A DNA stretch of 64,000 bases from positions 62,001-126,000 of the IMG/VR virus record IMGVR_UViG_3300005253_001115, one strand, 5' to 3'. A model generated the notes under the pieces. The model did not search any database. It saw only the letters and a program-made list of their open reading frames with translations, and was not told the origin of the DNA. Position numbers and translations under genes: made by a program. Positions 1,444-62,670 of the stretch are shown one piece after another. Every line of letters starts with the position of its first letter. Position 1 is the first letter of the stretch.

Positions 1444-2520
<1,077 letters not shown>

Positions 2521-2535
2521 AGAACTGGAGACTGA

Positions 2536-9004
<6,469 letters not shown>

Positions 9005-9005
9005 G

Positions 9006-10478
9006 ATGGCTCATCGTCACCAAATCATCATCATACCCAATGTAATAGACATGAAGGCCCTGGACTTTGATGGAACTGAACAGTTGCTTAACTCCTCAGA
9101 CAACCCACTTGGTATCGCTAATGAGTGGAGCATTCAGATAAACGCCAATCCCGGTAGCGATTCTAACGATATTTACTTGTTGCGTATTCAACCGATTACC
9201 GGGTTTGGTAATCAAATAGCTATTCATTTAAGAGGAGATCAAGCTAACGACCCGATTAGCGTACGGATTTTGCGTGCTAATGGAAATTCCCTGAAAGATT
9301 ATGAATGGGACAGCACCTACACCGTAGGGACAAAGGTTTCCTATATTGTCACCTGGGACGGCACGGATTTGCTGCTCTACATAGACGGAGTGCTAACTGC
9401 GGCTGATACTTTGATCTCCGATTTCTCCTCAGCAATGACCGCAACAGACAGAAGAGTTTCTGTGGGGTCAGCGCTGGGTGGTGTGCCCTGGGTAGGTTTG
9501 ATTCATTCAACTTCTGTGTGGAATGTGGTGCTTACCCAAGCAGAGATTACTACTCTTCAGAACAGCGATTCCCCGGAAAATATAGACAACAGATTCAACT
9601 CCGGTGACTACTTTAGTTCGGCGAACCTTCAGCATTACTGGCGTCATGGGTTGGATGCAGCAGATATAGGCAAGGATTCAGGAAAAGCATCAACGCTCAT
9701 CGACATCGGTGACAACGCCACGGGCATCACAGCAGATGATATCGTGGAATACACCTCGGGAGTTGAAGATACGAAGGCCCTGGATTTCACTACAGGTGAA
9801 CATCTTAGAAACACCACAGAGCAAGCAATAGGTATAGCTAATACTTGGTCTATTCAAGCAAACTATGAGCCTTCAAATGTTGCATTTGAGTTCTCGGTGA
9901 TGGGAATCGGAACCAACAACACTAACAAAGATATGATTCGATTTGATCTTATAGGGAATGTAGCAAATGATCCTTTGCGCATAATTCTAACCGAGAATGA
10001 CACCACAGTAATCAAGCAGTATGATTGGGAGAGTGTTCATACCCTCGGTGTCAAAATAAGTGTGATCGCGACATGGGATGGCACCAATCTTGTCGTGTAT
10101 ATAGATGGGGTAGAAACCGCTGCTACCACCAAGACTACAGACAATGCAGGGTCTCAATTAGCCACTGTACGGTCAGTAGCAGTAGGCGGTAGAACTGTCG
10201 GCTCATTTTCCTTCTCTGGGGATATTCATTCGGTTTCTGTGTGGGATTCAGTCCTCACTCAAGCAGAGGTGACTTCCCTTCAGAATTCAAGCTCACCGCA
10301 GAGCATCGACAATCGCTTTGACTTTGGCAGCTATGCAAGCTCATCCAACCTTCAGCACTACTGGCGCTGCGGGTTCGATGCCACAGATATTGGCAGGGAT
10401 TACGGCAACGCTTCCACGCTCATCGACATCGGTGACAACGCCGAGAACATCACAGCAGATGATATTGTGACCTACTGA
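9006..10478 (+). CDS. Tandem LamG-like (two-domain) protein
   Basis: Two homologous ~245-aa repeats (ALDF...WSIQ.N...TWDGT.L..YIDGV...SVW..VLTQAE...LQHYWR.G.D...IDIGDNA..ITADDIV). Confidence 0.8.
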   Translation: MAHRHQIIIIPNVIDMKALDFDGTEQLLNSSDNPLGIANEWSIQINANPGSDSNDIYLLRIQPITGFGNQIAIHLRGDQANDPISVRILRANGNSLKDYEWDSTYTVGTKVSYIVTWDGTDLLLYIDGVLTAADTLISDFSSAMTATDRRVSVGSALGGVPWVGLIHSTSVWNVVLTQAEITTLQNSDSPENIDNRFNSGDYFSSANLQHYWRHGLDAADIGKDSGKASTLIDIGDNATGITADDIVEYTSGVEDTKALDFTTGEHLRNTTEQAIGIANTWSIQANYEPSNVAFEFSVMGIGTNNTNKDMIRFDLIGNVANDPLRIILTENDTTVIKQYDWESVHTLGVKISVIATWDGTNLVVYIDGVETAATTKTTDNAGSQLATVRSVAVGGRTVGSFSFSGDIHSVSVWDSVLTQAEVTSLQNSSSPQSIDNRFDFGSYASSSNLQHYWRCGFDATDIGRDYGNASTLIDIGDNAENITADDIVTY

Positions 10479-10925: not shown

Positions 10926-13199
<2,274 letters not shown>

Positions 13200-13224: not shown

Positions 13225-15096
13225 ATGGCCGACTTTACAGGCGCAACAGGTGAAACAGGCGCAACTGGTTCCACCGGTTTAACCGGTGCTGGCGTACAAG
13301 GTGCGTCCGGCGCTGGACAGACGGGCGCTACAGGCGCTACGGGTGTAGGTGTAACTGGAGCCCCGGGTGCCTCTATTACCGGCCCCACCGGCACCGCAGG
13401 CCCCCAAGGTAACGCAGGCGTACAGGGCTCCGCAGGAGACACTGGCTCCGCAGGCTCACAAGGCGTCCCCGGACCCATCGGTGTCCAGGGTGTCTCTATT
13501 ACGGGCTCTACGGGCATTACAGGCGTCGCAGGACCCCAAGGAATCGGCCTCACAGGTAAGACAGGAAACACAGGAAGCACAGGACCCCAGGGGGACGTTG
13601 GTCTCATTGGCAGCACAGGTATCCAGGGTATCGTGGGCTTAACCGGATCTATTGGCTCGACTGGTGTTGGTCTTGCTGGTACCACTGGTGCCACGGACGG
13701 CAGCACCGGAGGAACTGGCAACACTGGCTTTGCCGGTTTGACAGGAACCACCGGCCCGACCGGAACTCAAGGCAGCCCAGGAAACCAAGGTATCCAGGGC
13801 GAAACGGGACATCCGGGTCCGGTTGGTGTAATTGGTCCGCAAGGTATCCAAGGCACGGCTGGCATTGGTATCGGTCTCCCTGGAGAGACTGGCGATACTG
13901 GCAACACTGGCAACACTGGCCCGATTGGTCCGACCGGGGCAGTTACAGTCCACAGTGGTCTGACAGGGCGGGATCAGGACGATCACGAGCTTTACTTCCT
14001 GGCTGATGGTTCTCGCTTCATCGACAACAACGCTGATGCGGAGCTGAACGTCGTCATGGACTCTGGACTAGCTTCTGCCCAGCAGACGAATCTCGTCTTC
14101 TCGGATCGCGGCATTCTGGCGTGGACAATGACTAAGAACGTAGCGGGCAATCTCGCTTGGACTTCCAACTCCACCGGCAACATTGTGATGTTCCTGCACA
14201 AAGACGCTACGGCGTCGTCCATCTTGGTGGCCGCTAGTGGAAACGTAGGTATCGGAACGGGTGCGCCTTCATCCAAGCTGCACGTAGCAGGGAGCGCCCG
14301 TATCCAGGGTAACGAGCTTCGCGTGGACAACGATGCGGACGCTGACACCACGGTCACAATCGACTCTGGGCAGGCCGTTGCTCAGAATTCTCACTTCGTG
14401 CTGGCGGATCGCGGTAACGAACAATGGCTGCTCGCCAAGCCGCCGGACAACACGTTCTTCATCCAGCACGTTCCTGACGGTACTCCGCACTTGACGTTCC
14501 GTCCCGGTCATGTTATGGACTTGAATACGGCTACCCGATTCGAGAAAAATAACGCTGACCCGATGGATATCCACGCCCACGCAGCGCGCCACGACGTGGG
14601 TGATGCTGATCCTATCGACTGGGCGTCTAACCTGAATACAGTGAATCCTGACCTGTTCCGGCAGGCTCGTAATATGTTCCCAAATACTATTCAGGGGGGC
14701 GGAAACTCCGTTAGTGCGTCAACAAATAATAACCTGACTAGTTCTTTCGAGACACTCCACAGTATTGTTTTGGACTTTTCTAGTCGCTCTAACCCTTCTC
14801 AGGTGCTTATCATCGGACAGGGAAACTATATCGCAGACGGTGACTCAACGGTAACAATCGAACAGGCAATGCAGTTGGACTCTGGCGGAGGTTTCAGTAC
14901 GTTCGGCATACCCTCGAACAACTCTACTAGACGGGGAGGCGACGAGCATTTCTCATGCTGGAGCTTCTGGTGGCTGACTTGCCCTGCGTCAGTTTGCACC
15001 ATCCGTCTCCGGGCACGGGAACAAAATCAAGACGCTAACTGGAGTCGAGCCATGATTATTTACACAGATATCGGCGAGTCGCTCGCGATCTCCTAA
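13225..15096 (+). CDS. Collagen-like tail fibre protein
   Basis: About 240 aa of collagen, then a DHxLY.LADGSR...DSG...QQ.N module paralogous to 10926 and a [18 protein letters not shown] motif. Confidence 0.82.
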
Positions 15097-15106
15097 GGAG
15101 GCTTAA

Positions 15107-15649
15107 ATGGCCATTAACATCAGAATCGACCCAGCAGCATATGCCGCTAGTGGTCCTCTTGCTCAGTTTGCTACCCGGGAAATTCCCAACACTTATCCGA
15201 AGCTCCACGAGCCTCTCCTTTCGGCGGTTACGGGTACCGGCTACATCGCCAGCGCTCCTCGCCTCACGGGCTCTTCGAACATCTTAGATGACGGAAGTTT
15301 TCCCACAGCCGAGGGTGCTACGGGGACGTTTGAGGCAGCCCTTCCCGTAGATACAACCGAGGATATCGTAGTGCATGTGTCCCCCACCAGTGGCTCTGCA
15401 ATTGTGCGCGGCGGTAGTGCCTGGGACCCGAATCAGGCTGAATTCGATCCTTCTTACGGACTAGACGTTGGCATCGCGGGCGTCACTCTCCAGGGTGACG
15501 TTTTCGAGACGGCCCTCAAAGAGCCTGTGGGAATGCAGTTCCGGGCAAACTTGCAGGATTATGTTGCTCGTGGTATTCTCATTGTTACAGAGGGACCGAC
15601 CGGACCTCCGATGGACCCGGGAGAAATTGCGGACTATACCGCCCCGTAA
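15107..15649 (+). CDS. Hypothetical (likely virion) protein
   Basis: AAGGAGG SD, 180 aa. Confidence 0.75.
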   Translation: MAINIRIDPAAYAASGPLAQFATREIPNTYPKLHEPLLSAVTGTGYIASAPRLTGSSNILDDGSFPTAEGATGTFEAALPVDTTEDIVVHVSPTSGSAIVRGGSAWDPNQAEFDPSYGLDVGIAGVTLQGDVFETALKEPVGMQFRANLQDYVARGILIVTEGPTGPPMDPGEIADYTAP

Positions 15650-15657
15650 GGCTCAGC

Positions 15658-15667
15658 TACACTAAAG
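15658..15667 (+). promoter_or_regulatory. Putative promoter TACACTAAAG, 7 nt before ATG 15675
   Basis: Same sequence and spacing as the site at 170. Confidence 0.6.
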
Positions 15668-15674
15668 AGCTTGC

Positions 15675-18491
15675 ATGTCGAGCATCTGCCCCGTTTGTGG
15701 TGGTGGGGAATTCGCTAGCACTGAAAGCTCAACCGCTGGCCTGACCCCTTACCTTTCTTGTAATTCCTGTGGCCTCTGGGCACAGTATCCAGCCCCTGCA
15801 TTCCGGTACGAGTCGGACCTCCAACCCCAGACGGGCCGGGAGGCTATGACCGAAGTTGCCTGTCTCTTGAATCAAGACCTGGCTGCGAGGCTGTTCCACG
15901 CACATAAGCCCGAATCCGTTCTGGATATCGGGTCGAAATACCCTTACTTCCTGAAGTGCTTCAAGGATTTAGGCGTCGAGGATGTCATAGGCATCGACGG
16001 CTTCGAGGGGGCCACGGAATTCGGTGACGAGCTGGGTGTGGCGATGATTATCGACAACTTCCTTGAGCACGATTTCGGGGACAAGAAGTTCGATCTCATT
16101 ACGCTGGTCCACTGCATCGAACACTTCTCCGATCCTGCCGCAGCGATGAGCAAGGTTCGTTCCATCCTATCCGATACTGGAGTGGTCTATATACGCACCC
16201 CAGAAGTCAAGACAGTAGGCATCGACATTCACCTGACGGATGAACACTACCAAATCCACCCCATCCTATTCTCCCGAGAATCCTTCCGCTTACTGGCTAA
16301 GCAGGAAGGATTCCGCATTTTCGATGAGTGGGAGCAGGGAGAAGTGGGTCAGATGGACTGGCAGCTTCGGATCGCCGAAGACATCCGCATTAGCTTCGCA
16401 GTTGTTTCCTGTAATGAGGAAGAGGTCATAGGGCGCATGCTCGACAGTATCGAGTCCTTGGCCTGGGAGGTAGTCGTTTACCTCAACAACTGCGACGACA
16501 GGACCCCGGAGATCATCAAGGAGTTCGGTGAGCGCACGGGCACCAAAACCCGAATCCTAGAGGGTTTTTGGGATGACAATTTCGCCCGCGCTAAGAACGA
16601 GGCTATTATGGCGTGCGAGGGCACCCACGTAGCTTGGATGGACTGCGACGACGTTCTGTCCGATGACGCCCCTGGCAAGATCATGGTTCTCCTCAACGAG
16701 AGACCCGACAATCCCCAGGATTGGCGGCTTATTTACGGAGGCGATACGTTCTTCCATTGCCGACTCTGGCGAAATGAGGCTCGGCTGGACCGTCACGGTA
16801 ACACGTTCCTGCCACACTTCCACGACAAGTGCCATGAGTATATATGCCTGGGTGGCTACCAGGGAATGAAGCTGAAGTGTGACGATATTACGCTGCGGCA
16901 TCTCCCGACACCTAAGGACGCCTCCGGCCGAAACATTCGTATTCTCTTGGCAGCGGAAGCCGAAGGACCCACCCAGTGTCCTTACTGCCCCGCCACCCAC
17001 GACGACAAGGGACGCACCTTGTTCTACCTGGGTAACGGTCTCCGAGAGGGTGGCCGGACCGAAGAGGCACTAGAGCGCTATCAGGTCTATCTCGATGAGA
17101 ATCTGGGCTGGCATGACGAACGCTTCTGGGCATGGATGTACCAGGGCTACTGTAACCAGAAGCTAGGTAAGAATCCTGAGGCTCTGCGATCATATTGTAA
17201 CGCGCTGGCTACGAACTCCCGTTGGGCAGAGCCGTACATGTCTATCGCTCGCCTGAAGTATGCCCAGAACGACTACAAGGCTGCTATTTCATGGTCTATC
17301 CAAGCTGCCGCACAAACCCTGCCCAACACGCTGATGTTCCTAAACACGGGAGCATACAAGGACCAGCCGTTCAGATTGATGAGCTGGTGCTGGGAGCACC
17401 TCGGGGACCTTGACAAGGCCATCCAATATGCCGAGATTGCCGCACAGCGAATTGGCGGACCAGACAGTGATTGGGCCGCACGAATCACTGGCCTTAGAGC
17501 GACCCGGGGAGGAGACCGAGAAGCGGCCCCTAAGCAAAAGATCGCCCAGGTAATGCGCCCCGGTGCCCTGGGTGACATTATCATGTCCACGGCAGCCTGC
17601 AAGGGTTTGAAGGAGCAGGGATACTATGTGCGGTACGTCTGTCACCCCGGCTCGATTTCAGCCATCGAGGACAACCCATACGTCGATGAAGTGGTCGCCG
17701 TACCGGAGAACAACTGGGATGGGATTCTGAAGCAGACGGAGAACCTCCCCAAGGCTGAGAAGGTGATTGCCTTCCAGTATCCGATGAAGGAGCAGTATCC
17801 CGAGGTACCGATGCGCCAGCACTTGGCTCACTTCTTCTGCGAGGATGCCGGAGTCCCTGTGAGCACGGACCTCTCGATGGGCTTTAAGCAGGAGCACCTA
17901 GATTATGGTGCTCTTCACGGTACCGGCAAGGTGGTCATCCACACGAAGGCTGGCTGGTCCCCGCTGAAGAACTGGCCGATGGACGCCTGGGAAGACCTTG
18001 TGGGGCGCATTAAGGAGGCAGGTTTCGAGGTAGCCCAGATCGGTACCGCCAGCGAGCCTCTGGTTCCGGGTGCTGAGCGCTTGGATACTCCCTCCATTAA
18101 GCACGCTGCCGCTGTACAGAAGTTCTCGGCCCTTTTCATCGGTGTAGACTCTATCTTCAACCACACTTCACAGGCTGTCGCTAAGAAGTCCGTGATTCTA
18201 TGGGGATCTACTCACCCGCTGGGCTCTGGGTACGATCAAAATGTGAATCTGGTGAACGGCGGTGTCTGGACACGCGAGATGGGAACGGGAGGGCCTACGA
18301 AGTCCTGCCAACCGTGCTATCGCGAGTACAACCAAATGAGTGTCCACCCGAAGCCACCGTGCCCTAATCTGGTACAGCACGCAATAACTACACTCCCTGA
18401 AGAGGAGTACCCCCAGAAAACGATAAACGCATGTGTTTCCTCTAACACACCGGATTTGGTATGGAAATACGTAAAGGAGATTCTTTTGTGA
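15675..18491 (+). CDS. Multidomain SAM methyltransferase / GT2 glycosyltransferase / TPR / GT9-like glycosyltransferase
   Basis: Zn-ribbon plus VLDIGS...FDLITLVHCIEH...YIRTP (MTase); CNEEEVIGRMLDS...NFARAKN...WMDCDD (GT2); TPR helices; MRPGALGDIIMST...IHTKAGW..KNWP...FIGVDS..NH (GT9/GT-B). Confidence 0.85.
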   Translation: MSSICPVCGGGEFASTESSTAGLTPYLSCNSCGLWAQYPAPAFRYESDLQPQTGREAMTEVACLLNQDLAARLFHAHKPESVLDIGSKYPYFLKCFKDLGVEDVIGIDGFEGATEFGDELGVAMIIDNFLEHDFGDKKFDLITLVHCIEHFSDPAAAMSKVRSILSDTGVVYIRTPEVKTVGIDIHLTDEHYQIHPILFSRESFRLLAKQEGFRIFDEWEQGEVGQMDWQLRIAEDIRISFAVVSCNEEEVIGRMLDSIESLAWEVVVYLNNCDDRTPEIIKEFGERTGTKTRILEGFWDDNFARAKNEAIMACEGTHVAWMDCDDVLSDDAPGKIMVLLNERPDNPQDWRLIYGGDTFFHCRLWRNEARLDRHGNTFLPHFHDKCHEYICLGGYQGMKLKCDDITLRHLPTPKDASGRNIRILLAAEAEGPTQCPYCPATHDDKGRTLFYLGNGLREGGRTEEALERYQVYLDENLGWHDERFWAWMYQGYCNQKLGKNPEALRSYCNALATNSRWAEPYMSIARLKYAQNDYKAAISWSIQAAAQTLPNTLMFLNTGAYKDQPFRLMSWCWEHLGDLDKAIQYAEIAAQRIGGPDSDWAARITGLRATRGGDREAAPKQKIAQVMRPGALGDIIMSTAACKGLKEQGYYVRYVCHPGSISAIEDNPYVDEVVAVPENNWDGILKQTENLPKAEKVIAFQYPMKEQYPEVPMRQHLAHFFCEDAGVPVSTDLSMGFKQEHLDYGALHGTGKVVIHTKAGWSPLKNWPMDAWEDLVGRIKEAGFEVAQIGTASEPLVPGAERLDTPSIKHAAAVQKFSALFIGVDSIFNHTSQAVAKKSVILWGSTHPLGSGYDQNVNLVNGGVWTREMGTGGPTKSCQPCYREYNQMSVHPKPPCPNLVQHAITTLPEEEYPQKTINACVSSNTPDLVWKYVKEILL

Positions 18492-18945
18492 CTAGTACAA
18501 TACCTATGAACTATAGATCCATTATTTCGATGGCAACTAACTGGAGATCTCCATGAGACAAGATTTGGCTGTACTTCTCAATAACCTGTGGGGTTTGTTT
18601 AGAACTCGCATATATGGTGCTTTTATACGAGGGAAGTTCTTGTGTTTTCGACACACGATAAGCCAGAACGTGTTTAGATTGTCCCTCAATGATGAGGGTA
18701 TGCGTTCGAATAGTAAGTTCAATGCAAATCTTTACAACTTTCTATCAACACACTACCAATATGTTCGTAACGATAGAAACAGAAGTGTTACGCCTGCTGA
18801 GGTAGCTGACGTGGAGGAAGAGTTTGCAAGACGATCCTCTTTGCGGTGGGGGCATCTTAAAGACGCTCTGAAAAAGCGTAATGTGCTTCCTGGGCAGGAT
18901 ACAACGCATGATTAGCACAATACCTATGAACTACAAATGCCTTAT
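18488..18945 (+). repeat. Degenerate direct repeat 420 bp apart (core ACAATACCTATGAACTA at 18497 and 18917)
   Basis: 17-bp identical core. The copies translate as (M)TSTIPMNYRSII and MISTIPMNYKCLI. Confidence 0.8.
18553..18915 (+). CDS. Hypothetical protein (insertion-like)
   Basis: GGAG SD, visibly more AT-rich, and bracketed by the 420-bp repeat. Confidence 0.6.
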   Translation: MRQDLAVLLNNLWGLFRTRIYGAFIRGKFLCFRHTISQNVFRLSLNDEGMRSNSKFNANLYNFLSTHYQYVRNDRNRSVTPAEVADVEEEFARRSSLRWGHLKDALKKRNVLPGQDTTHD

Positions 18946-21391: not shown

Positions 21392-21814
21392 ATGTTATCT
21401 CTAACCAGGGGATACTCTATTTCCTCTGGCGATGGGAAACTGGCGATGGCGTTTAACGGTTCGAGTCGGATCTATATGGATCTCTCTACAATCGAGCACG
21501 GACTTGAGTGCTCGGATTGTTTGAGATGGTACGTCCCGATTTTTGGGACCGATGATCCCTGCCCGCACTGCAAGAAGCAGGGCGTTCCTACCTACCCCAA
21601 CCGAGTCCGGTACCTAGCTGTAAAGCAAGGGTATTCTCTGCGAGAACTCGCCCGTGAGGCGGATCTTGAGTGGAGAACTGTGCGTTTAATCTCCCAGGGC
21701 CGTCGCGCCCCGCACACAGGTACCAAGAAAAAGATCTTGAAGGCTCTCGGTTCATCTATCAAGAAGAGCGAAATGCAATACGTGTTTCCTCACGACCGCA
21801 GGAGTCAACGATGA
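21392..21814 (+). CDS. Zn-ribbon plus XRE-family HTH regulator
   Basis: CSDC...CPHC followed by NRVRYLAVKQGYSLRELAREADLEWRTVRLISQGRRAP. Start is uncertain. Confidence 0.7.
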   Translation: MLSLTRGYSISSGDGKLAMAFNGSSRIYMDLSTIEHGLECSDCLRWYVPIFGTDDPCPHCKKQGVPTYPNRVRYLAVKQGYSLRELAREADLEWRTVRLISQGRRAPHTGTKKKILKALGSSIKKSEMQYVFPHDRRSQR

Positions 21815-22371
21815 GATTCAATTGGGACATCACGGCGGATTATGATTACGCCTCCACGCAGGTCAACCTTTCGGATGATATTGCGAAACGTATCATGGAC
21901 TGGGGAAAAGAGAATATCCCAGACGAAGAGGTTTACGATACGGACGAGGACAAAGGTCGAGATGACGATCCTCACATTACCATCCTGTACGGCATTGTAG
22001 ACGATGCTCCCCAGCAGGTAATCGACCTGTTGCAGGGAAAGCCCCCAGCTATAGCTACTCTGGGGAAAGTATCTCTCTTCGAGAACGATGACTACGATGT
22101 CGTCAAAATCTCTGTGGAGTCCGAAGACCTAGCCAAGTTCCAGAAGATCCTATGGGATGAGGTAGAGCACGAATCCGATTATCCCGAGTACGAGCCACAC
22201 GTCACCATCGCCTATGTGAAGCCGGGTTCCGGCAGCTTGTACTCGGGAGCCACTGACTTCGAGGGTACGAAAATCACTTTCGATACCGTTGTCTTCTCGC
22301 CCAGTGATGGGGAGAAGACTGATATTCCCCTCGGTGTAGGACTTGCTGCGAGGTTAAGCTGGAGCGTCTAG
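21811..22371 (+). CDS. 2H phosphoesterase (Acb1 / T4 57B-like)
   Basis: AGGAG SD. Two HxT motifs, PHITILYG and PHVTIAYV, about 80 aa apart. Confidence 0.8.
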   Translation: MRFNWDITADYDYASTQVNLSDDIAKRIMDWGKENIPDEEVYDTDEDKGRDDDPHITILYGIVDDAPQQVIDLLQGKPPAIATLGKVSLFENDDYDVVKISVESEDLAKFQKILWDEVEHESDYPEYEPHVTIAYVKPGSGSLYSGATDFEGTKITFDTVVFSPSDGEKTDIPLGVGLAARLSWSV

Positions 22372-27431
<5,060 letters not shown>

Positions 27432-27434
27432 CCC

Positions 27435-28664
27435 GTGGCATCTAGAGCAATTCGCAATACAACCCTATCAGATATTTTTCTGGATGATATTGGGACTCGT
27501 ATTCCTGCGAGCACGATCCTCGAAATTCATCCGTCTAATGTTCAACTGTGGCACAATTCCGCAGACGGCGGCGACGCCGAGCCCTTCATCGACAATGGCG
27601 ACCTAGTTGTTTCTGACGAGAACGGAGATCTTGCCCCAGACCACGGCAAGAGCTTCCTAAAGCTGGACCATGTTCACATCCAGATCAACGGGGTACCGCA
27701 TTACGGGTCCGTTAAGGTCATCAATTTTGAGGGAGCCACAGGCAGCACCGCCGTTGGCTCTATCGTCAACATCTCAGGCTTGCAGGGTGAAACTGGCCTG
27801 ACTGGAAATGTTGGCGCTTCGGGCACTACAGGCACCCAAGGTACCACGGGTGAGACAGGAGCAACTGGAGAAACTGGAGCAACTGGTATCACAGGAGCCT
27901 CTGGTGAAACAGGTGCTACAGGTTCGACAGGACAGACTGATTTTCAAGACGTGATTGTTTTGAATGTAGAAGCACCAGTAGATGGTGATGAGGTCTGTCT
28001 AGAAGCTTTCGCATTCTATCCGTATGAAATTCTTAGCATCGGACAACACACTAGCGTGGGTTACATCGAGACCACAATCAAAGTGGCTGGCGCTACTGTT
28101 GGTGCATTCGAAGAGCTGTCAGCCACAGCAGGGTCTACAGCTACAGACGCAACGGGTGAAACAGGCGTAGCAATCGGTGACGATGTTTCCATCTCGTTCA
28201 CTGGGTCCTCTACAGGCCCCGCCAACTACTGCATGTCCATGAATATTCGTAGGTTGAATCCCCAGGATAACGACTTCATCGGCAGCACCGGAGCAACTGG
28301 CATCGCAGGAGCCTCGGGCGAGACAGGAGCAACGGGTGCCTTCGATATCGAGCAGCTTGAGCTTTATTGGCAGGGTAACCTTTCGAATCTGCTAGTAGAT
28401 ATCACGCTTGTAGAAAACGCCTTCTATACTTTCGACGTGCATGAAGTATGCCGCTCAGTGAGTGCGGGTTCTGCAACATTAGACTTCAAAATCGAAGGAA
28501 CTTCCATCGGTGGTCTTGGCGCTCTGGCTGCAACGGCGGGTTCGACCTGCGCCAGTGAGACTGGTGCCAATAGCGTGGCTATTGGGGAAAAGCTCAGCTT
28601 GGGCGTAACAGGCGTCTCCAGCGGTGCCAACTTGGCTATCTCTATGAAGACGACTAGGACATAA
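27435..28664 (+). CDS. Short-collagen protein with two KTTR-type C-terminal modules
   Basis: GTG start. [11 protein letters not shown]...PAS N-terminus as in 25359; ends LAISMKTTRT. Confidence 0.78.
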   Translation: MASRAIRNTTLSDIFLDDIGTRIPASTILEIHPSNVQLWHNSADGGDAEPFIDNGDLVVSDENGDLAPDHGKSFLKLDHVHIQINGVPHYGSVKVINFEGATGSTAVGSIVNISGLQGETGLTGNVGASGTTGTQGTTGETGATGETGATGITGASGETGATGSTGQTDFQDVIVLNVEAPVDGDEVCLEAFAFYPYEILSIGQHTSVGYIETTIKVAGATVGAFEELSATAGSTATDATGETGVAIGDDVSISFTGSSTGPANYCMSMNIRRLNPQDNDFIGSTGATGIAGASGETGATGAFDIEQLELYWQGNLSNLLVDITLVENAFYTFDVHEVCRSVSAGSATLDFKIEGTSIGGLGALAATAGSTCASETGANSVAIGEKLSLGVTGVSSGANLAISMKTTRT

Positions 28665-36513: not shown

Positions 36514-37302
36514 ATGGTTTACGGTAGGATCTACAAAGCTGAATTCCCTAATGGGAAGCTGTATGTAGGTCTTACCACCATGCGTTTGAAGATCCGGGTA
36601 GACTGTCACATGGGTTCTTCTCGTTCCCAGAAGCATAGAGGATGTGTAGCTTTTAACAATGCCATCCGAAAGCATGGGAAACCCGTCTTCACGGAACTTT
36701 GCACAGCGGACTCTAAGGAAGAATTGGACGCAGCGGAAGTACATTGGATTGCTAAATTGGGAACTATGGTTCCGGCTGGTTACAACATCAAAGAAGGTGG
36801 CGGTAACGGTAAGCACTCTGGAGAAACTAAGCGGAAGATGAGTAAGACCCGTGCAGGCATGAAAATGCCTCCCAGAACGCCGGAACAGTGCCTGAACTAT
36901 CGAAGGCTTGGTGAGCAGAACGCTAATTTCGGGAACCCTCGCAGTGCTGAGACACGCCAAAAAATAGGCGACGCACAGCGGGGCAATAAGAATCACCGAT
37001 TCGGAGCCAAGTGGGACGAAGAGCACTTGGTTATGTTTAGTGAAAGGCAACTAGGGGAAAAGAATCATTTTCACGGCCAGAAGCACACTGCTTCCGCTAA
37101 AGACAAGATGTCTGCGAAAAAGAGAAAATTCTCCAAAGAAGATGTAATTGAGATCTTACGACGCTCGGGGGAAGGCGAAACTCAAAAAAGTATCGCAAAA
37201 TCCTATAGTGTGAGCCCGACAACAATTAGTAGAGCTATCAACGGAAAACGCCGTTGCTACTCTAACCAAGGAGCAATAATGCCTAACCCTTCGCCTCAGT
37301 AA
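36514..37302 (+). CDS. Free-standing GIY-YIG homing endonuclease (NUMOD3 repeats, C-terminal HTH)
   Basis: GRIY-x9-LYVGLT, AE.HWI....T..P.GYN, KHSGETKRKMS / RSAETRQKIG / KHTASAKDKMS. The C-terminus reads through tube exon 1 (MPNPSP), and the TAA lies 4 nt inside the intron. Confidence 0.88.
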   Translation: MVYGRIYKAEFPNGKLYVGLTTMRLKIRVDCHMGSSRSQKHRGCVAFNNAIRKHGKPVFTELCTADSKEELDAAEVHWIAKLGTMVPAGYNIKEGGGNGKHSGETKRKMSKTRAGMKMPPRTPEQCLNYRRLGEQNANFGNPRSAETRQKIGDAQRGNKNHRFGAKWDEEHLVMFSERQLGEKNHFHGQKHTASAKDKMSAKKRKFSKEDVIEILRRSGEGETQKSIAKSYSVSPTTISRAINGKRRCYSNQGAIMPNPSPQ

Positions 37303-43293: not shown

Positions 43294-43515
43294 ATGGCCA
43301 AGCTGATCGTAGCACTGGCTGCACTGTGGATTCTGGTTCCGGCTGTTGCCCTCGCAGGCGGTGGTTTCGATCAGGAGCAACAGGTGGCGCAGAAGACTAT
43401 CGTGATCGAGAACCATGTCCCGGCCAACGACAATAACGGTGTTATTATCGCTGCTGCCGTGGCGGGTATATTCTCGTTGGCGGGCGTTCTGGTTCTTCGG
43501 AACAAGAAGAGCTAA
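43294..43515 (+). CDS. Small membrane protein
   Basis: N-terminal signal-like hydrophobic stretch and a C-terminal TM helix followed by RNKKS. Confidence 0.65.
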   Translation: MAKLIVALAALWILVPAVALAGGGFDQEQQVAQKTIVIENHVPANDNNGVIIAAAVAGIFSLAGVLVLRNKKS

Positions 43516-43594
43516 GTGGGCAGCATACGGTGCGCAAATTGCCACAGGAGAAAGACGGCAAAAGCGATTAACTCACATAGGTGGCAACTTGTCA

Positions 43595-44056
43595 ATGGAT
43601 AACTTTGTCTGCTATATCTGCCATGCCCAGAAAACGCTGGACTTTGTGCATAAACACCACAAGGTCCCCAAGTCGCTGGGTGGGTCGGATGGTCCAGATA
43701 ACCTCGTTAGCTTATGTTCAGGATGTCACGCTGATACACACACACTGGCCAGAATGATGCGCAATCCCAAGAGAGTTGGGGAAGTTCGGTCTGCGGTACA
43801 AAGCATGTTCCCACAAGGGGACGTGCAAGCTAGATGCGTAGAACTTGCTAACCTAGCAAACCGCAGCACAGTGATGAGTGCAGGACAGAAAGCCCTCGAT
43901 GTAGAGCGAGAAATCGGGGTTGGACTAAAGTTGAAGAAGCCGTATCGCGATGCGTTGCAGTTGATCGCCCGGGATCGCGGCCTGTCGATGGCAAACTACA
44001 CGAGAAAGATTATCGAGGATCACATTCGTAGAGTGTATCCTAATGTAGGGAAATGA
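43595..44056 (+). CDS. HNH-domain protein with C-terminal ribbon-helix-helix-like segment
   Basis: CYIC...HHKVPKSLGGSDGPDNLVSLCSGCH. C-terminal YRDALQLIARDRGLSMANYTRKIIEDHI. Confidence 0.75.
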   Translation: MDNFVCYICHAQKTLDFVHKHHKVPKSLGGSDGPDNLVSLCSGCHADTHTLARMMRNPKRVGEVRSAVQSMFPQGDVQARCVELANLANRSTVMSAGQKALDVEREIGVGLKLKKPYRDALQLIARDRGLSMANYTRKIIEDHIRRVYPNVGK

Positions 44057-44404: not shown

Positions 44405-44606
44405 AACGATAGACTCTTCCGCATCAAAAGATGATTGGAAGCATCTCTACAAATGGGTAGAGAACCAGACACTCTCGTTCCAAAACACACACGACGACGT
44501 TAGGAACCCTTGGCTCATGCCCGATACGACACGCAAAGAGATCATCGAGCACATCCATAGAGCAAACGTGGGTGGCTGGCTGGGTCCGTATGAGGGTATG
44601 TTCTAA
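44388..44606 (+). CDS. Hypothetical protein
   Basis: Coupled to the following LamG gene by TAATG. Confidence 0.5.
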   Translation: MAHASRTIDSSASKDDWKHLYKWVENQTLSFQNTHDDVRNPWLMPDTTRKEIIEHIHRANVGGWLGPYEGMF

Positions 44607-45358
44607 TGGCGTCCAAAGGATTACTGCTAGGTACTGTGTTTAATGCGCCTCTGTCGATCAGCTTTAATGGGGTAGACGAGGATCTGTTTAACAACACGCC
44701 GCAGACCATCGGGATAGCGAACGACTGGAGCGTTCAGGCTCTCTGTGAGCCCGCAGCGCTCACCGCGAGCGAGATGGTTGTCTTCACCATACGTGGTGCT
44801 CCAAACGAGATTGTGCTGTCTATTCTTGCCTTCGACCCCAACGATCCACTTAGAGTATGGACAAGGAACAGTTCCGGCACTACAATCAAGCGCTACGAAT
44901 TCGAAAATCATTTTACTGTGGGTGTCAAGGTGAGCATCCTCTGTACCTGGGACGGAACGGATCTCGTAACGTACATAGATGGTTCCGTGGCTACTCCAAC
45001 CACACTGGTCGATGACAACGCAGGAACCATGACCGACACGGCACGTCGAGTATCAATAAGTTCCAGAGAGGGAGAGGGTGTCCCGCAGTCATTCTTTGAG
45101 GGAAAGATCCACTCAGTTTCAGTATGGAACACTGTTCTCACACAACCCAAAGTCACAGTGTTGGAGAACTCTGGGAGACCACAAGAAATAGACAACCGCG
45201 TGAACTCGGGAGCTTATGACGCCAGTGCCAACCTCGTCCATTACTGGCGTCTTGGCCTTGACGCTTCGGACATCGGGAAGGATTCTGGCACCGGGACAGC
45301 CATTGACATCGGCGACGACGCTGTGAACATCACCTCCGACGACATCGTAATCTACTAA
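44606..45358 (+). CDS. Single LamG-like domain protein (paralog of 9006)
   Basis: IGIANDWSVQ...TWDGTDL..YIDG...SVWNTVLTQ...LVHYWRLGLD...IDIGDDAVNITSDDIVIY. Confidence 0.82.
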   Translation: MASKGLLLGTVFNAPLSISFNGVDEDLFNNTPQTIGIANDWSVQALCEPAALTASEMVVFTIRGAPNEIVLSILAFDPNDPLRVWTRNSSGTTIKRYEFENHFTVGVKVSILCTWDGTDLVTYIDGSVATPTTLVDDNAGTMTDTARRVSISSREGEGVPQSFFEGKIHSVSVWNTVLTQPKVTVLENSGRPQEIDNRVNSGAYDASANLVHYWRLGLDASDIGKDSGTGTAIDIGDDAVNITSDDIVIY

Positions 45359-45398: not shown

Positions 45399-46733
45399 AT
45401 GGCACATGATCCTGGCTCACCGTTTGGGACAGAAGAGCATGCACTGGACCCCGCGCTAGAGGGCGGCGAAGCCGGACCTACAGGTGCGCCTGATCCTACC
45501 GGCCCCACGGCCCCTAGCCTGATACCTTTCGGCCCCACTGGAACAACAGGAGAGCAAGGTCCCACAGGTCCGGCTGGCGCTCCCACGGGCGAAACTGGAG
45601 CTACAGGTAGCATCGGCAACATCGGCAACACTGGTAATACAGGAGCCGGAGAGACGGGTGCCGCAGGACCGCAAGGTGCTTCTGGACAAACTGGTGAGAC
45701 AGGACCCGCAGGAGCCACCGACGGCAGCACAGGCCCCGCAGGTTCTACAGGAGAAACTGGAACCGCAGGAGTCCAGGGTGACCAGGGCAGCACTGGTCTT
45801 ACCGGGGTCGGGACCACAGGTTCCGTAGGCTCGCAAGGTGCCGCAGGCATCCAGGGACAAACAGGACTCACAGGTGCCAACAGCACTGTAGAGGGACCGA
45901 CAGGAACCACAGGACCGCAGGGCGAGGGAATCACAGGAAATACCGGCGCGCAAGGCGACACAGGTCTTCAGGGTCCGGCCGGAACTGGAGCCCAGGGTAA
46001 CACTGGACCTGCTGGTGTTGAGGGTGATAAGGGAAACAAGGGAAACACAGGCACCCAAGGTGAGAGTGGTCCTACTGGACCCTCTGGCGGTCCTATCGGT
46101 GCTACGGGAGACACAGGTAACACTGGAAACACAGGTGTTGGTGACGAGGGACCTGTTGGGCCTACCGGTCCCACTGGAAACGTCACTGGTGACCTTGTGC
46201 CTCACCGAGCCAACTCGTTCACCGATGAGAGGCACCTTACTGACGGGCAGTGGGCTGCTGCTGCGGGAACGTTCGGCACGCCCAGCAACACCAACCGCTA
46301 CGTTACCGAACAGGACTCCAGGGTACAGGGATCGTTTACTTACCAGGGGGCGAATGTGTGGGGCGGTGACTCTATTCCTTGGATACAAGGCACACCTGTT
46401 GTACTGTCCTGGGCGTCTGAAATAGACGACGTTGGTGACTGGTTTAGCGGTCCCGGTGCAGACCGTTTTATCGTGCCCTCTGGAGTGTCCCGTATCCGAG
46501 CTACGGCTGAACTATGGCCACAGGATGCCAGTTTTACACATGAACTTATTGTGAGGGACAACTCCGGCGGTGAGACGGTCTGGAGTCATAGTGCCGTACC
46601 AGAAGTAAGAACTTTGCTAGTTACTGGACCTGTTGCTGTGTTTGCGGGATATCAGATCTACGTCAGATCCACTCGGAACCAGACAGGTAGCACATCTATA
46701 ACCAGTAGCTTCACGATCGAGAAGGTCGCTTAG
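45399..46733 (+). CDS. Collagen-like fibre protein
   Basis: [21 protein letters not shown] leader, about 240 aa of collagen and a beta-rich C-terminus. Confidence 0.85.
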
Positions 46734-59325: not shown

Positions 59326-59614
59326 GCTTTTTCCTTTTCGTCTCAAACGTCCAGGCATTGCACAAGAAAAAGAGCAAGTATGCACCCGCCTCTTCCCAGT
59401 AACCTGCAATAGCGAAGAACAACATCAACGCGCCGCAAACGCAGAGTCCCATGAAGGAAGAGATGACCCAAAACCTATGCATGCCCTCTTTAGAGCCGCA
59501 CAGGGTTAGCATCATGCCGCCTCCAACGTGCGCGCTATAAACACAGAGTCCTATGAGGGAAGAGATGACCCAAAACCTACGCACTCCTTCTTTTGGGCCG
59601 CGTGGGGTTATCAT
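59294..59614 (-). CDS. Small membrane protein with an internal 34-codon duplication
   Basis: ATG overlaps the polA TGA. KEG..RFWVISS..GLCV occurs twice, 102 bp apart. Confidence 0.55.
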   Translation of the reverse strand: MITPRGPKEGVRRFWVISSLIGLCVYSAHVGGGMMLTLCGSKEGMHRFWVISSFMGLCVCGALMLFFAIAGYWEEAGAYLLFFLCNAWTFETKRKKHVKQNKTIRE

Positions 59615-62649: not shown

Positions 62650-62656
62650 GCGACTT

Positions 62657-62666
62657 CTTTAGAGTA
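62657..62666 (-). promoter_or_regulatory. Putative promoter TACTCTAAAG, 7 nt before the polA ATG
   Basis: Member of the motif family. No SD in the spacer. Confidence 0.6.
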
Positions 62667-62670
62667 GCGG

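What the first reader, a model, noticed from the sequence alone, without database searches (positions are those of the whole stretch)
15675..18491. Four-module enzyme: Zn-ribbon/MTase + GT2 + TPR + GT9 with its own promoter
Seen: two glycosyltransferase folds (GT-A and GT-B), a SAM methyltransferase and TPRs in one 938-aa chain, placed between fibre genes. Known: GT2-TPR proteins glycosylate protein substrates (flagellin, spore collagens) in Firmicutes. Inference: an assembly line that initiates, extends and methylates a protein glycan.
Basis: partly seen in the sequence, partly recalled or inferred. Interest (0 to 1): 0.7.

Follow-up and report, generated by a model that had tools for sequence, protein, structure and literature searches.

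The report
Phage four-module fibre-glycosylating enzyme candidate
An uncultured marine-sediment jumbo phage encodes one 938-residue protein that joins a methyltransferase, a protein-type glycosyltransferase with a TPR arm and a heptosyltransferase-like domain, and its relatives sit next to threonine-rich collagen-like fibre genes so often that it most likely decorates the phage's own fibres with a short methylated sugar chain.

Summary
The ORF is real: 15675-18491, + strand, 938 aa. All four modules pass their tests. These are a Cys4 zinc ribbon plus class I SAM methyltransferase (aa 1-232), a GT2/GT-A domain with an invariant DxDD (237-415), a TPR arm (416-611), and a GT9/GT-B domain (621-938) that carries an invariant Cys4 insert.

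The claim of an own promoter is not supported. The gap to the upstream ORF is 25 bp and the scan found no sigma-70-like site on the + strand.

The window is part of a 266.6-kb uncultured myovirus from marine sediment. It holds at least 10 collagen-repeat ORFs whose G-X-Y triplets carry Thr at Y in 45-92% of cases.

Evidence for a protein acceptor:
- The closest solved relatives of the GT2 module are protein or peptide glycosyltransferases (GmaR, SunS, ThuS).
- Split homologues of all three enzyme modules lie in flagellin glycosylation islands of Fidelibacterota.
- 51% of 65 viral loci that carry the enzyme also hold a Thr-rich collagen-like ORF, against 11% of 79 tail-collar control loci.

Best reading (confidence about 0.55): a soluble late enzyme O-glycosylates Thr in the G-X-T repeats of the virion fibres, extends the sugar and methylates it. 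The closest worked example is C. difficile SgtA acting on BclA3. Donors, reaction order and acceptor are inferred. I rate it a new variant of a known kind.

The parts
15675..18491 (+). ORF of the four-module enzyme, 938 aa, soluble
   Evidence: Searches give the ORF. There is no transmembrane segment: the highest Kyte-Doolittle 19-residue mean is 1.09. The AF2 model has mean pLDDT 88.6, with only aa 613-620 below 50.
15675..15794 (+). Cys4 zinc ribbon (C5, C8, C29, C32)
   Evidence: The cysteines are kept in the 14 to 15 of 17 homologues whose sequence covers them. The model shows beta hairpins at aa 13-18 and 22-29.
15837..16370 (+). Class I SAM methyltransferase core (aa 55-232)
   Evidence: PF13489 scores 63 bits. 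D84, G86, D108, H146 and E149 are conserved. Foldseek matches the sugar C3-methyltransferases TcaB9, KijD1 and MtmC at E about 1e-10.
16383..16919 (+). GT2 / GT-A glycosyltransferase (aa 237-415), with DxDD at 16641-16652
   Evidence: PF00535 scores 58.8 bits. The family profile matches GmaR at 3e-32, SunS at 9e-27 and ThuS at 1e-19. Foldseek matches SunS and ThuS at about 5e-15. D275, D323, D325, D326, H387, E388 and H409 are invariant.
16920..17507 (+). TPR-like helical arm (aa 416-611)
   Evidence: Helices appear in the AF2 model. PHROG 13126 covers aa 238-595.
17535..18488 (+). GT9 / GT-B glycosyltransferase (aa 621-938)
   Evidence: PF01075 scores 32.6 bits. The separate model has pLDDT 91.7. 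VIA-align gives Z 20.6-23.8 to the solved GT9 enzymes 3tov, WaaF, TibC and WaaC, while the next glycosyltransferase family reaches at most 12.8. D634, K765, D825, H830 and T846 are invariant, and the first four align with WaaC D13, K192, D261 and H266.
18306..18434 (+). Invariant Cys4 insert in the GT9 C-lobe (C878, C881, C896, C920)
   Evidence: All four cysteines are invariant in 17 of 17 homologues. The motif is also kept in the flagellin-island homologue P0180. It occupies the same topological position as the TibC iron finger (Cys339, 342, 358, 370; PMC4358343). Homology between the two is not proven.
10926..13199 (+). Collagen-repeat tail fibre with tail-collar domain, 757 aa; candidate acceptor
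   Evidence: Pfam finds Collar and Collagen; PHROGs finds tail fibre families. Thr occupies Y in 37 of 66 triplets.
13225..15096 (+). Collagen-repeat fibre, 623 aa; candidate acceptor
   Evidence: Annotated. Thr occupies Y in 27 of 64 triplets.
15107..15649 (+). Conserved 180-aa ORF of unknown function, directly upstream of the enzyme gene
   Evidence: It has no family hit. The same position and length are kept in L001 and L002, whose enzyme is 69% identical.
1456..9004 (+). Four further collagen-repeat ORFs (1456-2520, 2545-4251, 4251-7346, 7331-9004)
   Evidence: PF01391 matches. Thr dominates the Y position.
22372..28664 (+). Three further collagen-repeat ORFs (22372-24789, 25359-26858, 27435-28664)
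   Evidence: Thr at Y is 121 of 174, 80 of 87 and 17 of 25 triplets respectively.
45399..46733 (+). Collagen-repeat ORF beside a ConA-like lectin ORF (44606-45358)

Best explanation
The protein is a soluble phage enzyme that most likely builds a short methylated O-glycan on the phage's own collagen-like fibre proteins. It appears to be made together with them late in infection.

Proposed steps (all inferred):
1. The TPR arm holds the fibre chain.
2. The GT-A domain (DxDD 323-326, metal-dependent, inverting) transfers a hexose or HexNAc from a UDP-sugar to Thr hydroxyls at the Y position of G-X-T repeats. SgtA does this on BclA3 and GmaR does it on flagellin.
3. The tethered GT9 domain adds a second sugar, by analogy a heptose from host ADP-heptose. 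Its base is D634 and its donor-binding residues are K765, D825 and H830.
4. The N-terminal zinc-ribbon methyltransferase methylates the glycan.

Likely consequences: hydration and stabilisation of a triple helix that lacks hydroxyproline, and shielding or tuning of the fibres.

Shown here: the domains, the catalytic motifs, the homologies, the gene context and the co-occurrence statistics. Inferred: the acceptor, the donors, the order of steps and the biological role.
For: 1. All three catalytic modules are intact and their key residues are invariant across 17 homologues of 29-90% identity.

2. The closest solved relatives of the GT2-TPR module act on proteins or peptides. The profile gives GmaR 3e-32, SunS 9e-27 and ThuS 1e-19. 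Foldseek puts SunS and ThuS on top.

3. SgtA is a direct precedent. It is a GT-A domain plus TPRs, sits beside bclA3, and adds beta-O-GlcNAc to Thr of collagen repeats (PMC7157674).

4. The window holds at least 10 collagen-repeat ORFs with roughly 500 G-X-T triplets. The enzyme gene follows two of them with gaps of 10-25 bp.

5. The order fibre, fibre, 180-aa ORF, enzyme is kept in relatives 69% identical.

6. Among 65 viral loci found through the GT9 module, 33 (51%) hold a Thr-rich collagen-like ORF. Among 79 tail-collar-centred control loci, 9 (11%) hold a collagen-like ORF and only 5 of those are Thr-rich. For loci of at least 15 kb the counts are 27 of 47 against 3 of 18, Fisher p 0.005.

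7. Of the 25 loci in bacterial genomes, 12 (11 carrying the fused enzyme or a version broken by frameshifts, 1 a GT9 gene with separate module ORFs) have such an ORF within 5 kb. None of the 5 stand-alone GT9 loci there, nor the 2 found among assembled contigs, has one.

8. Positive loci fall in 8 of 14 clusters at 50% identity and in several deep branches of the tree.

9. In a Marinimicrobia/Fidelibacterota genome, separate homologues of the GT9 module (34% identity, Cys motif included), the GT2-TPR module and the Methyltransf_23 module lie beside FlaG, FliD, FliS and two flagellin genes, together with sulfotransferases.

10. The protein has no membrane segment.

11. The Cys4 insert of the GT9 module sits where TibC carries the iron finger that contacts its protein substrate.
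Against: - No experiment and no direct structural evidence link the enzyme to a fibre. The complex prediction gave no answer.
- Phage glycosyltransferases often sit in tail-fibre regions for other reasons, for example host surface modification (PMC7029224).
- About half of the enzyme loci show no collagen-like ORF within 10 kb. In four distant relatives the neighbours are helicases or packaging genes.
- The GT9 core superposes better on LPS heptosyltransferases (rmsd 3.0-3.7 A) than on TibC (5.6 A).
- The phage lacks GmhA and any NTP_transferase, so the second donor is unknown.
- Motif I of the methyltransferase is atypical: DIGSKYP instead of GxGxG.
- The co-occurrence test is not corrected for relatedness among loci.
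- Thr at the Y position is common in bacterial collagens in general (31.6% across all bacteria, PMC8968730).
Confidence: 0.55

Rival explanations
1. Host envelope remodelling. The enzyme modifies the LPS core, O-antigen or an exopolysaccharide of the infected cell with heptose or hexose plus methyl groups. This would block superinfection or stop progeny from re-adsorbing.
For: - The GT9 module is structurally closest to LPS heptosyltransferases and keeps their base and donor-binding residues.
- Glycosyltransferases in tail-fibre regions of marine myophages have been read in this way (PMC7029224).
- The genome has a second cluster with GT9-like, GT1-like and GT2 enzymes, an epimerase, methyltransferases and sulfotransferases.
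Against: - The relatives of the GT2-TPR module act on proteins or peptides.
- TPR arms are protein-binding modules.
- No curated LPS heptosyltransferase equivalog is matched: scores are 16-26 bits against cut-offs of 170-185.
- The specific excess of Thr-rich collagen neighbours over tail-collar controls is not explained.
- The cellular homologues sit in flagellin islands, not in LPS core clusters.
Confidence: 0.15
2. Protein glycosylation of another target: other virion proteins (capsid, sheath, tube) or host surface appendages such as flagellin or pilin, rather than the collagen-like fibres.
For: - The cellular homologues lie in flagellin glycosylation islands.
- About half of the viral loci lack a nearby collagen-like ORF.
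- From memory, mycobacteriophages glycosylate capsid and tail-tube proteins (Freeman et al. 2023). I saw only the title, as reference 61 of PMC12801897. The paper itself was not held.
Against: - In this phage the gene is embedded in the collagen-fibre block and the arrangement is conserved.
- The enrichment is specific for Thr-rich collagen repeats.
Confidence: 0.15
3. A non-protein, non-envelope target: hypermodification of phage DNA, or synthesis of a free methylated oligosaccharide or small-molecule glycoside.
For: - Phage glycosyltransferases classically glucosylate DNA (PMC9614988).
- Helicase genes lie near the enzyme gene in four distant loci.
- The fold of the methyltransferase module resembles NDP-sugar C-methyltransferases of antibiotic pathways.
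Against: - No solved DNA glycosyltransferase appears in the top 50 structural matches shown.
- The presence of TPRs, the flagellin-island homologues and the collagen association all point elsewhere.
- The module lacks the third, sugar-binding domain of TcaB9.
Confidence: 0.05

Closest known systems
SgtA of Clostridioides difficile (BclA3 O-GlcNAc transferase)
   Same: A GT-A catalytic domain is followed directly by TPRs. The gene lies next to a collagen-like G-X-T protein gene. The acceptor is Thr in collagen repeats (PMC7157674).
   Different: SgtA has 358 aa and is a single-activity enzyme of a spore-forming bacterium. Here the GT2-TPR unit is fused to a methyltransferase and a GT9 domain and is phage-encoded. 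I could not fetch the SgtA sequence, so there is no direct comparison. The activity of the phage enzyme is untested.
GmaR of Listeria (flagellin O-GlcNAc transferase) and SunS/ThuS (peptide S-glycosyltransferases)
   Same: These are the best solved sequence and structure relatives of aa 231-487. The profile gives 3e-32 and 9e-27. Foldseek matches SunS and ThuS at about 5e-15, with TM by target 0.54-0.64. All have a GT-A domain plus a helical substrate-binding part.
   Different: Identity is only 14-18%. The acceptors differ (flagellin Ser/Thr, peptide Cys). None carries extra catalytic modules.
GT9 heptosyltransferases WaaC, WaaF and 3tov
   Same: The fold matches at Z 20.6-23.8. The catalytic Asp in the N-terminal G-D motif and the K, D and H donor-binding motifs are kept.
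   Different: The module does not reach any curated heptosyltransferase equivalog. It has a 50-residue Cys4 insert and family-specific YP...YP...H motifs. It is fused to a protein-type glycosyltransferase.
BAHT family (TibC, Aah): protein O-heptosyltransferases of autotransporters
   Same: They have a GT9-like core that hyperglycosylates a repetitive protein. A Cys4 metal finger is inserted late in the C-lobe and touches the substrate (PMC4358343). VIA-align gives Z 21.5.
   Different: There is no sequence match at E <= 1. The rmsd is 5.6 A. The module has no N-terminal beta-barrel and shows a normal Rossmann N-lobe. Oligomeric state is unknown.
Mimivirus L230 and mycobacteriophage virion glycosylation
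   Same: A virus encodes the enzymes that glycosylate its own structural proteins, and for L230 its own collagen-like proteins (PMC9614988).
   Different: L230 is a lysyl hydroxylase plus a glucosyltransferase that acts on hydroxylysine. The folds and chemistry are unrelated. The mycobacteriophage systems target capsid and tail tube as far as I recall, and that paper was not held.

Membership tests
GT2 (Pfam PF00535, GT-A fold) | Profile match above the curated cut-off | tested here: met
   58.8 bits against a cut-off of 23.3, aa 240-397.
GT2 (Pfam PF00535, GT-A fold) | DxD metal and nucleotide-sugar motif | tested here: met
   D323-C-D325-D326 is invariant in 17 of 17 homologues.
GT2 (Pfam PF00535, GT-A fold) | GT-A fold | tested here: met
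   The AF2 model has pLDDT about 90 in this part. Foldseek matches SunS and ThuS at about 5e-15.
Protein-acting GT2-TPR enzymes (GmaR, SgtA, SunS type) | GT-A domain followed directly by a TPR or helical substrate arm | tested here: met
   Helices span aa 416-611.
Protein-acting GT2-TPR enzymes (GmaR, SgtA, SunS type) | Homology of the catalytic domain to characterised members | tested here: met
   The profile gives GmaR 3e-32, SunS 9e-27 and ThuS 1e-19. The single sequence against GmaR gives 1.4e-4. SgtA itself was not compared.
Protein-acting GT2-TPR enzymes (GmaR, SgtA, SunS type) | Transfers sugar to Ser, Thr or Cys of a protein | not testable with these tools
   This needs an enzyme assay or mass spectrometry. 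The complex prediction gave no answer.
Protein-acting GT2-TPR enzymes (GmaR, SgtA, SunS type) | Gene linked to the gene of its protein substrate | tested here: met
   Collagen-like G-X-T ORFs lie adjacent here and in 51% of viral loci, against 11% of controls. Split homologues lie beside flagellin genes.
GT9 (Pfam PF01075, GT-B fold) | Profile match above the curated cut-off | tested here: met
   32.6 bits against a cut-off of 22. The family profile matches 3tov at 3.7e-9, WaaC at 8e-8 and WaaF at 9e-6.
GT9 (Pfam PF01075, GT-B fold) | GT-B fold closest to GT9 structures | tested here: met
   Z is 20.6-23.8 for the solved GT9 enzymes. The next glycosyltransferase family reaches at most 12.8; the GT9-like plant NDH subunit PnsB1 lies between at 17.9-19.0.
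GT9 (Pfam PF01075, GT-B fold) | Catalytic Asp (WaaC D13) and donor-binding Lys, Asp and His (WaaC K192, D261, H266) | tested here: met
   D634, K765, D825 and H830 are aligned to them and invariant.
GT9 (Pfam PF01075, GT-B fold) | Uses ADP-heptose as donor | not testable with these tools
   The genome has no GmhA and no NTP_transferase, so the donor would have to come from the host.
LPS heptosyltransferases I, II and III (NCBIfam equivalogs) | Score above the equivalog cut-off | tested here: not met
   TIGR02193 scores 21-26 bits against 185. TIGR02201 scores 16-18 bits against 170.
BAHT (TibC/Aah protein heptosyltransferases) | N-terminal beta-barrel and beta-hairpin thumb | tested here: not met
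   The module starts with a Rossmann lobe directly after the TPR linker. TibC aligns only from its residue 85-97 onward.
BAHT (TibC/Aah protein heptosyltransferases) | Cys4 iron finger inserted in the C-lobe | tested here: inconclusive
   An invariant CxxC-x14-C-x23-C lies at the equivalent position. TibC has CxxC-x15-C-x11-C. There are no coordinates or residue-level alignment to prove equivalence, and the metal is unknown.
BAHT (TibC/Aah protein heptosyltransferases) | Detectable sequence relationship | tested here: not met
   No TibC hit at E <= 1 with the family profile.
Class I SAM methyltransferase (PF13489) | Profile match, fold and acidic residue after strand 2 | tested here: met
   63 bits against a cut-off of 27. 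D108 is conserved. The fold matches TcaB9, KijD1 and MtmC.
Class I SAM methyltransferase (PF13489) | Glycine-rich motif I (GxGxG) | tested here: inconclusive
   The motif reads V-L-D-I-G-S-K-Y-P. Only G86 is invariant and D84 is nearly so.
TcaB9-type NDP-sugar C3-methyltransferases | Three domains: Zn-Cys4, methyltransferase core and a C-terminal sugar-binding domain | tested here: not met
   The Zn ribbon and the core are present. The module ends at about aa 232 and has no C-methyltransferase C-terminal domain hit.

The most novel reading that the evidence does not exclude
Tailed phages and prophages of many Gram-negative phyla carry a dedicated system that hyper-O-glycosylates the Thr residues of G-X-T collagen-like tail fibres or whiskers. 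The system is either a single polypeptide or two genes (GT9-Cys4 plus GT2-TPR, with or without a methyltransferase). It is evolutionarily shared with flagellin glycosylation islands. It would be a prokaryotic-virus substitute for hydroxyproline and a shield for the host-recognition apparatus. This would be the first tail-fibre glycosylation machinery defined for such phages.
Probability: 0.45. Interest if true: 0.8.

Novelty: new variant of a known kind. Interest (0 to 1): 0.65.

Why it matters
Glycosylation of phage virions has been shown in very few systems. Tail fibres determine host range, stability and antigenicity.

If this family glycosylates collagen-like fibres, three things follow:
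- It would explain how Hyp-free phage collagens with Thr at the Y position are stabilised.
- It would add a hidden layer to phage-host recognition and to proteomic or structural work on fibres.
- It would give a compact, soluble, three-activity enzyme for engineering glycosylated collagen-like materials.

The link to flagellin glycosylation islands also suggests gene flow between bacterial appendage glycosylation and phage structural modules.

The hypothesis can be tested directly by co-expression and mass spectrometry.

Tried and rejected
- **DNA similarity to deposited phages:** none. The 1031-aa collagen protein has no protein match either. DNA polymerase and sheath give only remote hits, namely Erwinia jumbo phages at 29% and Rctr197k. 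Lineage and host remain unknown.
- **NCBIfam:** no equivalog matched.
- **BAHT membership:** rejected. There is no sequence hit and no beta-barrel.
- **TcaB9-type C-methyltransferase membership:** rejected, because the third domain is missing.
- **Own sigma-70 promoter:** not found.
- **Complex prediction of enzyme 237-938 with fibre residues 150-245:** 'no answer', so it counts neither for nor against.
- **ADP-heptose pathway in the phage:** GmhA and NTP_transferase are absent. Only two cytidylyltransferase-like ORFs were found.
- **Context of stand-alone homologue P0178 (L019) and of Methylocucumis locus L039:** ordinary bacterial genes, uninformative.
- **Freeman et al. 2023 on mycobacteriophage virion glycosylation:** could not be read.
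- **Residue-level comparison with TibC and with SgtA:** not possible. No tool gave their sequences or model coordinates.
- **RNA evidence:** no RNA run holds the locus.


Full report
**1. What is in the sequence**

The ORF runs from 15675 to 18491 on the + strand and encodes 938 aa. Pfam finds three catalytic families above their gathering scores:
- Methyltransf_23, aa 67-215, 63 bits
- Glycos_transf_2, aa 240-397, 58.8 bits
- Glyco_transf_9, aa 700-850, 32.6 bits

Several TPR models hit between aa 441 and 601 at just under their cut-offs.

An AlphaFold2 model built on 17 homologues has mean pLDDT 88.6. Only the linker at aa 613-620 is disordered, and pTM is 0.51, so the modules behave as beads on a string. 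Its secondary structure gives this anatomy:

| Module | Residues |
|---|---|
| Two-hairpin Cys4 zinc ribbon | 1-40 |
| Rossmann-type methyltransferase | about 55-232 |
| GT-A domain | 237-415 |
| About ten paired helices (TPR arm) | 416-611 |
| GT-B domain | 621-938 |

The GT-B part modelled alone reaches pLDDT 91.7 and pTM 0.89. There is no transmembrane segment.

The promoter claim fails. The upstream ORF ends 25 bp before the ATG. The gaps within the fibre block are 10-25 bp. The sigma-70 scan finds no + strand site in 14900-18900. An AAAGAG Shine-Dalgarno-like element lies 6 nt before the ATG. The gene therefore looks co-transcribed with the fibre genes, although phage-specific promoters could not be assessed.

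**2. Where it sits**

The window is bases 62001-126000 of a single 266,640-bp virus record that CheckV rates about 89% complete. It has no DNA match among deposited phages. It carries a sheath-like protein, a family A DNA polymerase and a Dda-like helicase, so it is an uncultured jumbo myovirus.

The same sequence occurs in marine-sediment metagenomes from at least four studies. Contigs from those runs cover the ORF. Inside it the only indels are a minor 24-nt in-frame skip in one run and short deletions at its stop codon in one variant.

The surroundings are unusual. At least ten ORFs in the window contain collagen repeats. Two lie directly upstream (10926-13199 with a tail-collar domain, and 13225-15096), and PHROGs calls both of these tail fibres. 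In their G-X-Y runs the Y position is Thr in 45-92% of triplets, for example 121 of 174, 80 of 87 and 101 of 177. The literature value for all bacteria is 31.6% (PMC8968730).

**3. The family**

The word-index search found 22 proteins with the same modules at 29-90% identity. The exhaustive search found 111 cluster representatives at E < 1e-30. In these the modules appear in three forms:
- fused in the same order
- fused in other orders or with extra methyltransferases
- as separate proteins (GT9-Cys4 alone, zinc-ribbon methyltransferase alone, GT2-TPR-GT9, and methyltransferase-GT2-TPR)

In 65 viral loci the breakdown is as follows:

| Arrangement | Loci |
|---|---|
| Full fusion | 25 |
| GT2-TPR-GT9 fusion | 5 |
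| GT9 gene with a separate GT2-TPR gene nearby, usually adjacent | 31 |
| GT9 only seen | 4 |

The GT2-TPR plus GT9 pair is therefore the core. The methyltransferase is a frequent third partner, and one lineage (P0016) has let it decay.

Invariant residues across the 17 aligned homologues include:
- D275, D323, D325, D326, H387, E388 and H409 in the GT-A domain
- D634, K765, D825, H830 and T846 in the GT-B domain
- four cysteines: C878, C881, C896 and C920

**4. What each module resembles**

*GT2-TPR.* With the family profile, the best solved relatives are:

| Protein | Function | E-value |
|---|---|---|
| GmaR | Listeria flagellin O-GlcNAc transferase | 3e-32 |
| SunS | peptide S-glycosyltransferase | 9e-27 |
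| ThuS | peptide S-glycosyltransferase | 1e-19 |

Foldseek with the full model also puts SunS and ThuS on top. All three act on proteins or peptides.

The literature gives a direct precedent. C. difficile SgtA has a GT-A domain (aa 1-260) and four TPRs. It is encoded immediately upstream of bclA3. [quoted passage not shown]

*GT9.* VIA-align gives Z 20.6-23.8 to 3tov, WaaF, TibC and WaaC, while other glycosyltransferase families reach at most 12.8. The alignments place D634 on the catalytic Asp13 of WaaC. They place K765, D825 and H830 on K192, D261 and H266. The module is not an orthologue of the LPS heptosyltransferases, because NCBIfam scores are about a tenth of the cut-offs. It is also not a BAHT: there is no sequence hit, no beta-barrel, and the rmsd is 5.6 A.

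Its invariant CxxC-x14-C-x23-C insert lies between the last strands of the C-lobe and the terminal helix. TibC inserts its Cys339/342/358/370 iron finger at that same place, and that element contacts the protein substrate (PMC4358343). I treat this as an analogy, not as proven homology.

*Methyltransferase.* Sequence and fold resemble generic class I enzymes. Together with the zinc ribbon, they also resemble the first two domains of the NDP-sugar C3-methyltransferases TcaB9, KijD1 and MtmC. The third, sugar-binding domain is absent.

**5. Comparative context**

The order fibre, fibre, 180-aa ORF, enzyme is conserved in relatives 69% identical.

In four distant relatives the neighbours differ. 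They are helicases, a terminase-portal-capsid block, or a sugar-biosynthesis cluster.

Two further observations carry most of the weight.

*First, the flagellin islands.* A stand-alone homologue of the GT9 module (P0180, 34% identity over the whole module, including the Cys motif, E 9e-49) lies in a Marinimicrobia/Fidelibacterota genome. Its neighbours include:
- a GT2-TPR gene (33% identity over the catalytic N-terminal region)
- a Methyltransf_23 gene
- two sulfotransferases and a radical SAM enzyme
- FlaG, FliD, FliS and two flagellin genes

A second Fidelibacterota locus shows the GT9 and GT2-TPR genes beside a flagellin gene. In the tree these cellular genes nest among the phage enzymes. 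The same module set is therefore used in a classical protein-glycosylation island.

*Second, the collagen association.* The enzyme co-occurs with Thr-rich collagen-like ORFs.
- Of the 25 loci in bacterial genomes, many prophage-like (RecT, tail-collar proteins), 12 have such an ORF within 5 kb: 11 carrying the fused enzyme or a version broken by frameshifts, and 1 a GT9 gene with separate module ORFs. None of the 5 stand-alone GT9 loci there, nor the 2 found among assembled contigs, has one.
- Among the 65 viral loci, 33 (51%) do, and in all of them Thr occupies at least 41% of Y positions.
- Among 79 control loci centred on tail-collar domains, which is a deliberately conservative tail-fibre control, 9 (11%) hold a collagen-like ORF and only 5 of those are Thr-rich.
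- For loci of at least 15 kb the counts are 27 of 47 against 3 of 18, Fisher p 0.005.
- The test ignores relatedness among loci. Positive loci do fall in 8 of 14 clusters at 50% identity and in several deep branches of the tree.

**6. Most likely mechanism**

I conclude that the enzyme is most probably a cytoplasmic, late-expressed glycan assembly line acting on the phage's collagen-like fibres.
1. The TPR arm presents the chain.
2. The GT-A domain attaches the first sugar to Thr, with a UDP-hexose or UDP-HexNAc donor and inversion of configuration, as for SgtA and GmaR.
3. The GT9 domain adds a second sugar. Heptose from host ADP-heptose is the default guess, because the phage lacks GmhA and any NTP_transferase.
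4. The methyltransferase modifies the glycan.

The order is inferred. The GT9-Cys4 domain could equally be the initiating enzyme, by analogy with BAHTs.

The role is also inferred. One possibility is hydration and stabilisation of a Hyp-free triple helix, as has been proposed for glycosylated BclA (PMC8968730). Another is protection or tuning of the recognition apparatus.

The phage carries a second glycan cluster outside the window, with GT9-like, GT1-like and GT2 enzymes, an epimerase/dehydratase, three methyltransferases and two sulfotransferases. It also has a fourth GT9-like ORF in the window (52504-53631, - strand). The real glycan may therefore be larger and sulfated. The flagellin island likewise contains sulfotransferases.

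**7. Rivals**

- Host LPS or EPS remodelling remains possible. The GT9 module looks like LPS enzymes, and glycosyltransferases in fibre regions have been read that way (PMC7029224). It does not explain the protein-type GT2-TPR, the flagellin islands or the specific collagen enrichment.
- Another protein target, whether another virion protein or a host appendage, is compatible with the half of loci that lack nearby collagens.
- DNA or small-molecule targets have little support.
- The complex prediction returned 'no answer' and is not used as evidence.

**8. Novelty and verdict**

Each module belongs to a known superfamily, and GT2-TPR enzymes acting on collagen-like proteins are known from Firmicutes. 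I found four things undescribed in the searched literature:
- the fusion or gene pairing of GT2-TPR with a Cys4-bearing GT9 domain and a zinc-ribbon methyltransferase
- its wide distribution in phages and prophages
- its statistical link to Thr-rich collagen-like fibres
- its kinship with flagellin-island genes

I therefore rate it a new variant of a known kind, with function inferred but not shown. Interest is 0.65.

Noticed in passing
G000:C1 about 164.6-178.7 kb (locus L018 3602-16688, - strand), outside the window: A second glycan gene cluster lies here. It holds two GT9-like ORFs, two Glyco_trans_1_2 ORFs, a GT2, an NAD-dependent epimerase/dehydratase, three methyltransferases and two sulfotransferases. 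This suggests a methylated and sulfated glycan made by the phage.
   Followed up: partly
L018 17240-18991 (- strand), outside the window: A 583-aa PhoH-like protein has a LAGLIDADG/Hom_end domain inserted at about aa 256-342, which is probably an intein. A patatin-like phospholipase ORF follows.
   Followed up: no
window 21670-22371 (+): A 233-aa ORF matches 2'-5' RNA ligase / Acb1 (anti-CBASS phosphodiesterase) and sits inside the fibre block. A 187-aa counterpart is in L001.
   Followed up: no
window 52504-53631 (-): A further GT9-like ORF of 375 aa (PF01075, 33 bits) lies among replication genes. The genome has four GT9-like ORFs in all.
   Followed up: no
window 15654-15669 (+) and 62655-62670 (-): A shared 13-mer, GCTAC(A/T)CTAAAGA, ends 8 nt before the start codon of both the enzyme gene and the DNA polymerase gene. 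The 16-mer with up to 3 mismatches occurs 3 times against 0.31 expected. It could be a common translation-initiation or regulatory element.
   Followed up: partly
window 9006-10478 (+) and 44606-45358 (+): ConA-like lectin/glucanase (Laminin_G_3) ORFs are interleaved with the collagen-like ORFs. They are possible carbohydrate-binding fibre tips.
   Followed up: no
window 36514-37302 (+), 43415-44056 (+), 58066-59409 (-): Three homing-endonuclease-type ORFs were seen: GIY-YIG with NUMOD3, HNH, and LAGLIDADG. The last lies next to the DNA polymerase gene.
   Followed up: no
L020 (Marinimicrobia MAG contig JACDNV010000003.1), 1-20849: This is a large flagellin glycosylation island. It holds a radical SAM enzyme, two sulfotransferases, several GT2 and GT2-TPR proteins (one fused to a PMT_2 domain, 982 aa), Methyltransf_23, GT9-Cys4, FlaG, FliD, FliS and two flagellins.
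   Followed up: partly
L038 5445-6596 (Methylocucumis oryzae Sn10-6, contig NZ_LAJX01000042.1): A cultured methanotroph carries the fused enzyme (916 aa) followed 654 bp downstream by a collagen-like ORF with 80% Thr at Y. It could serve as an experimental proxy.
   Followed up: partly
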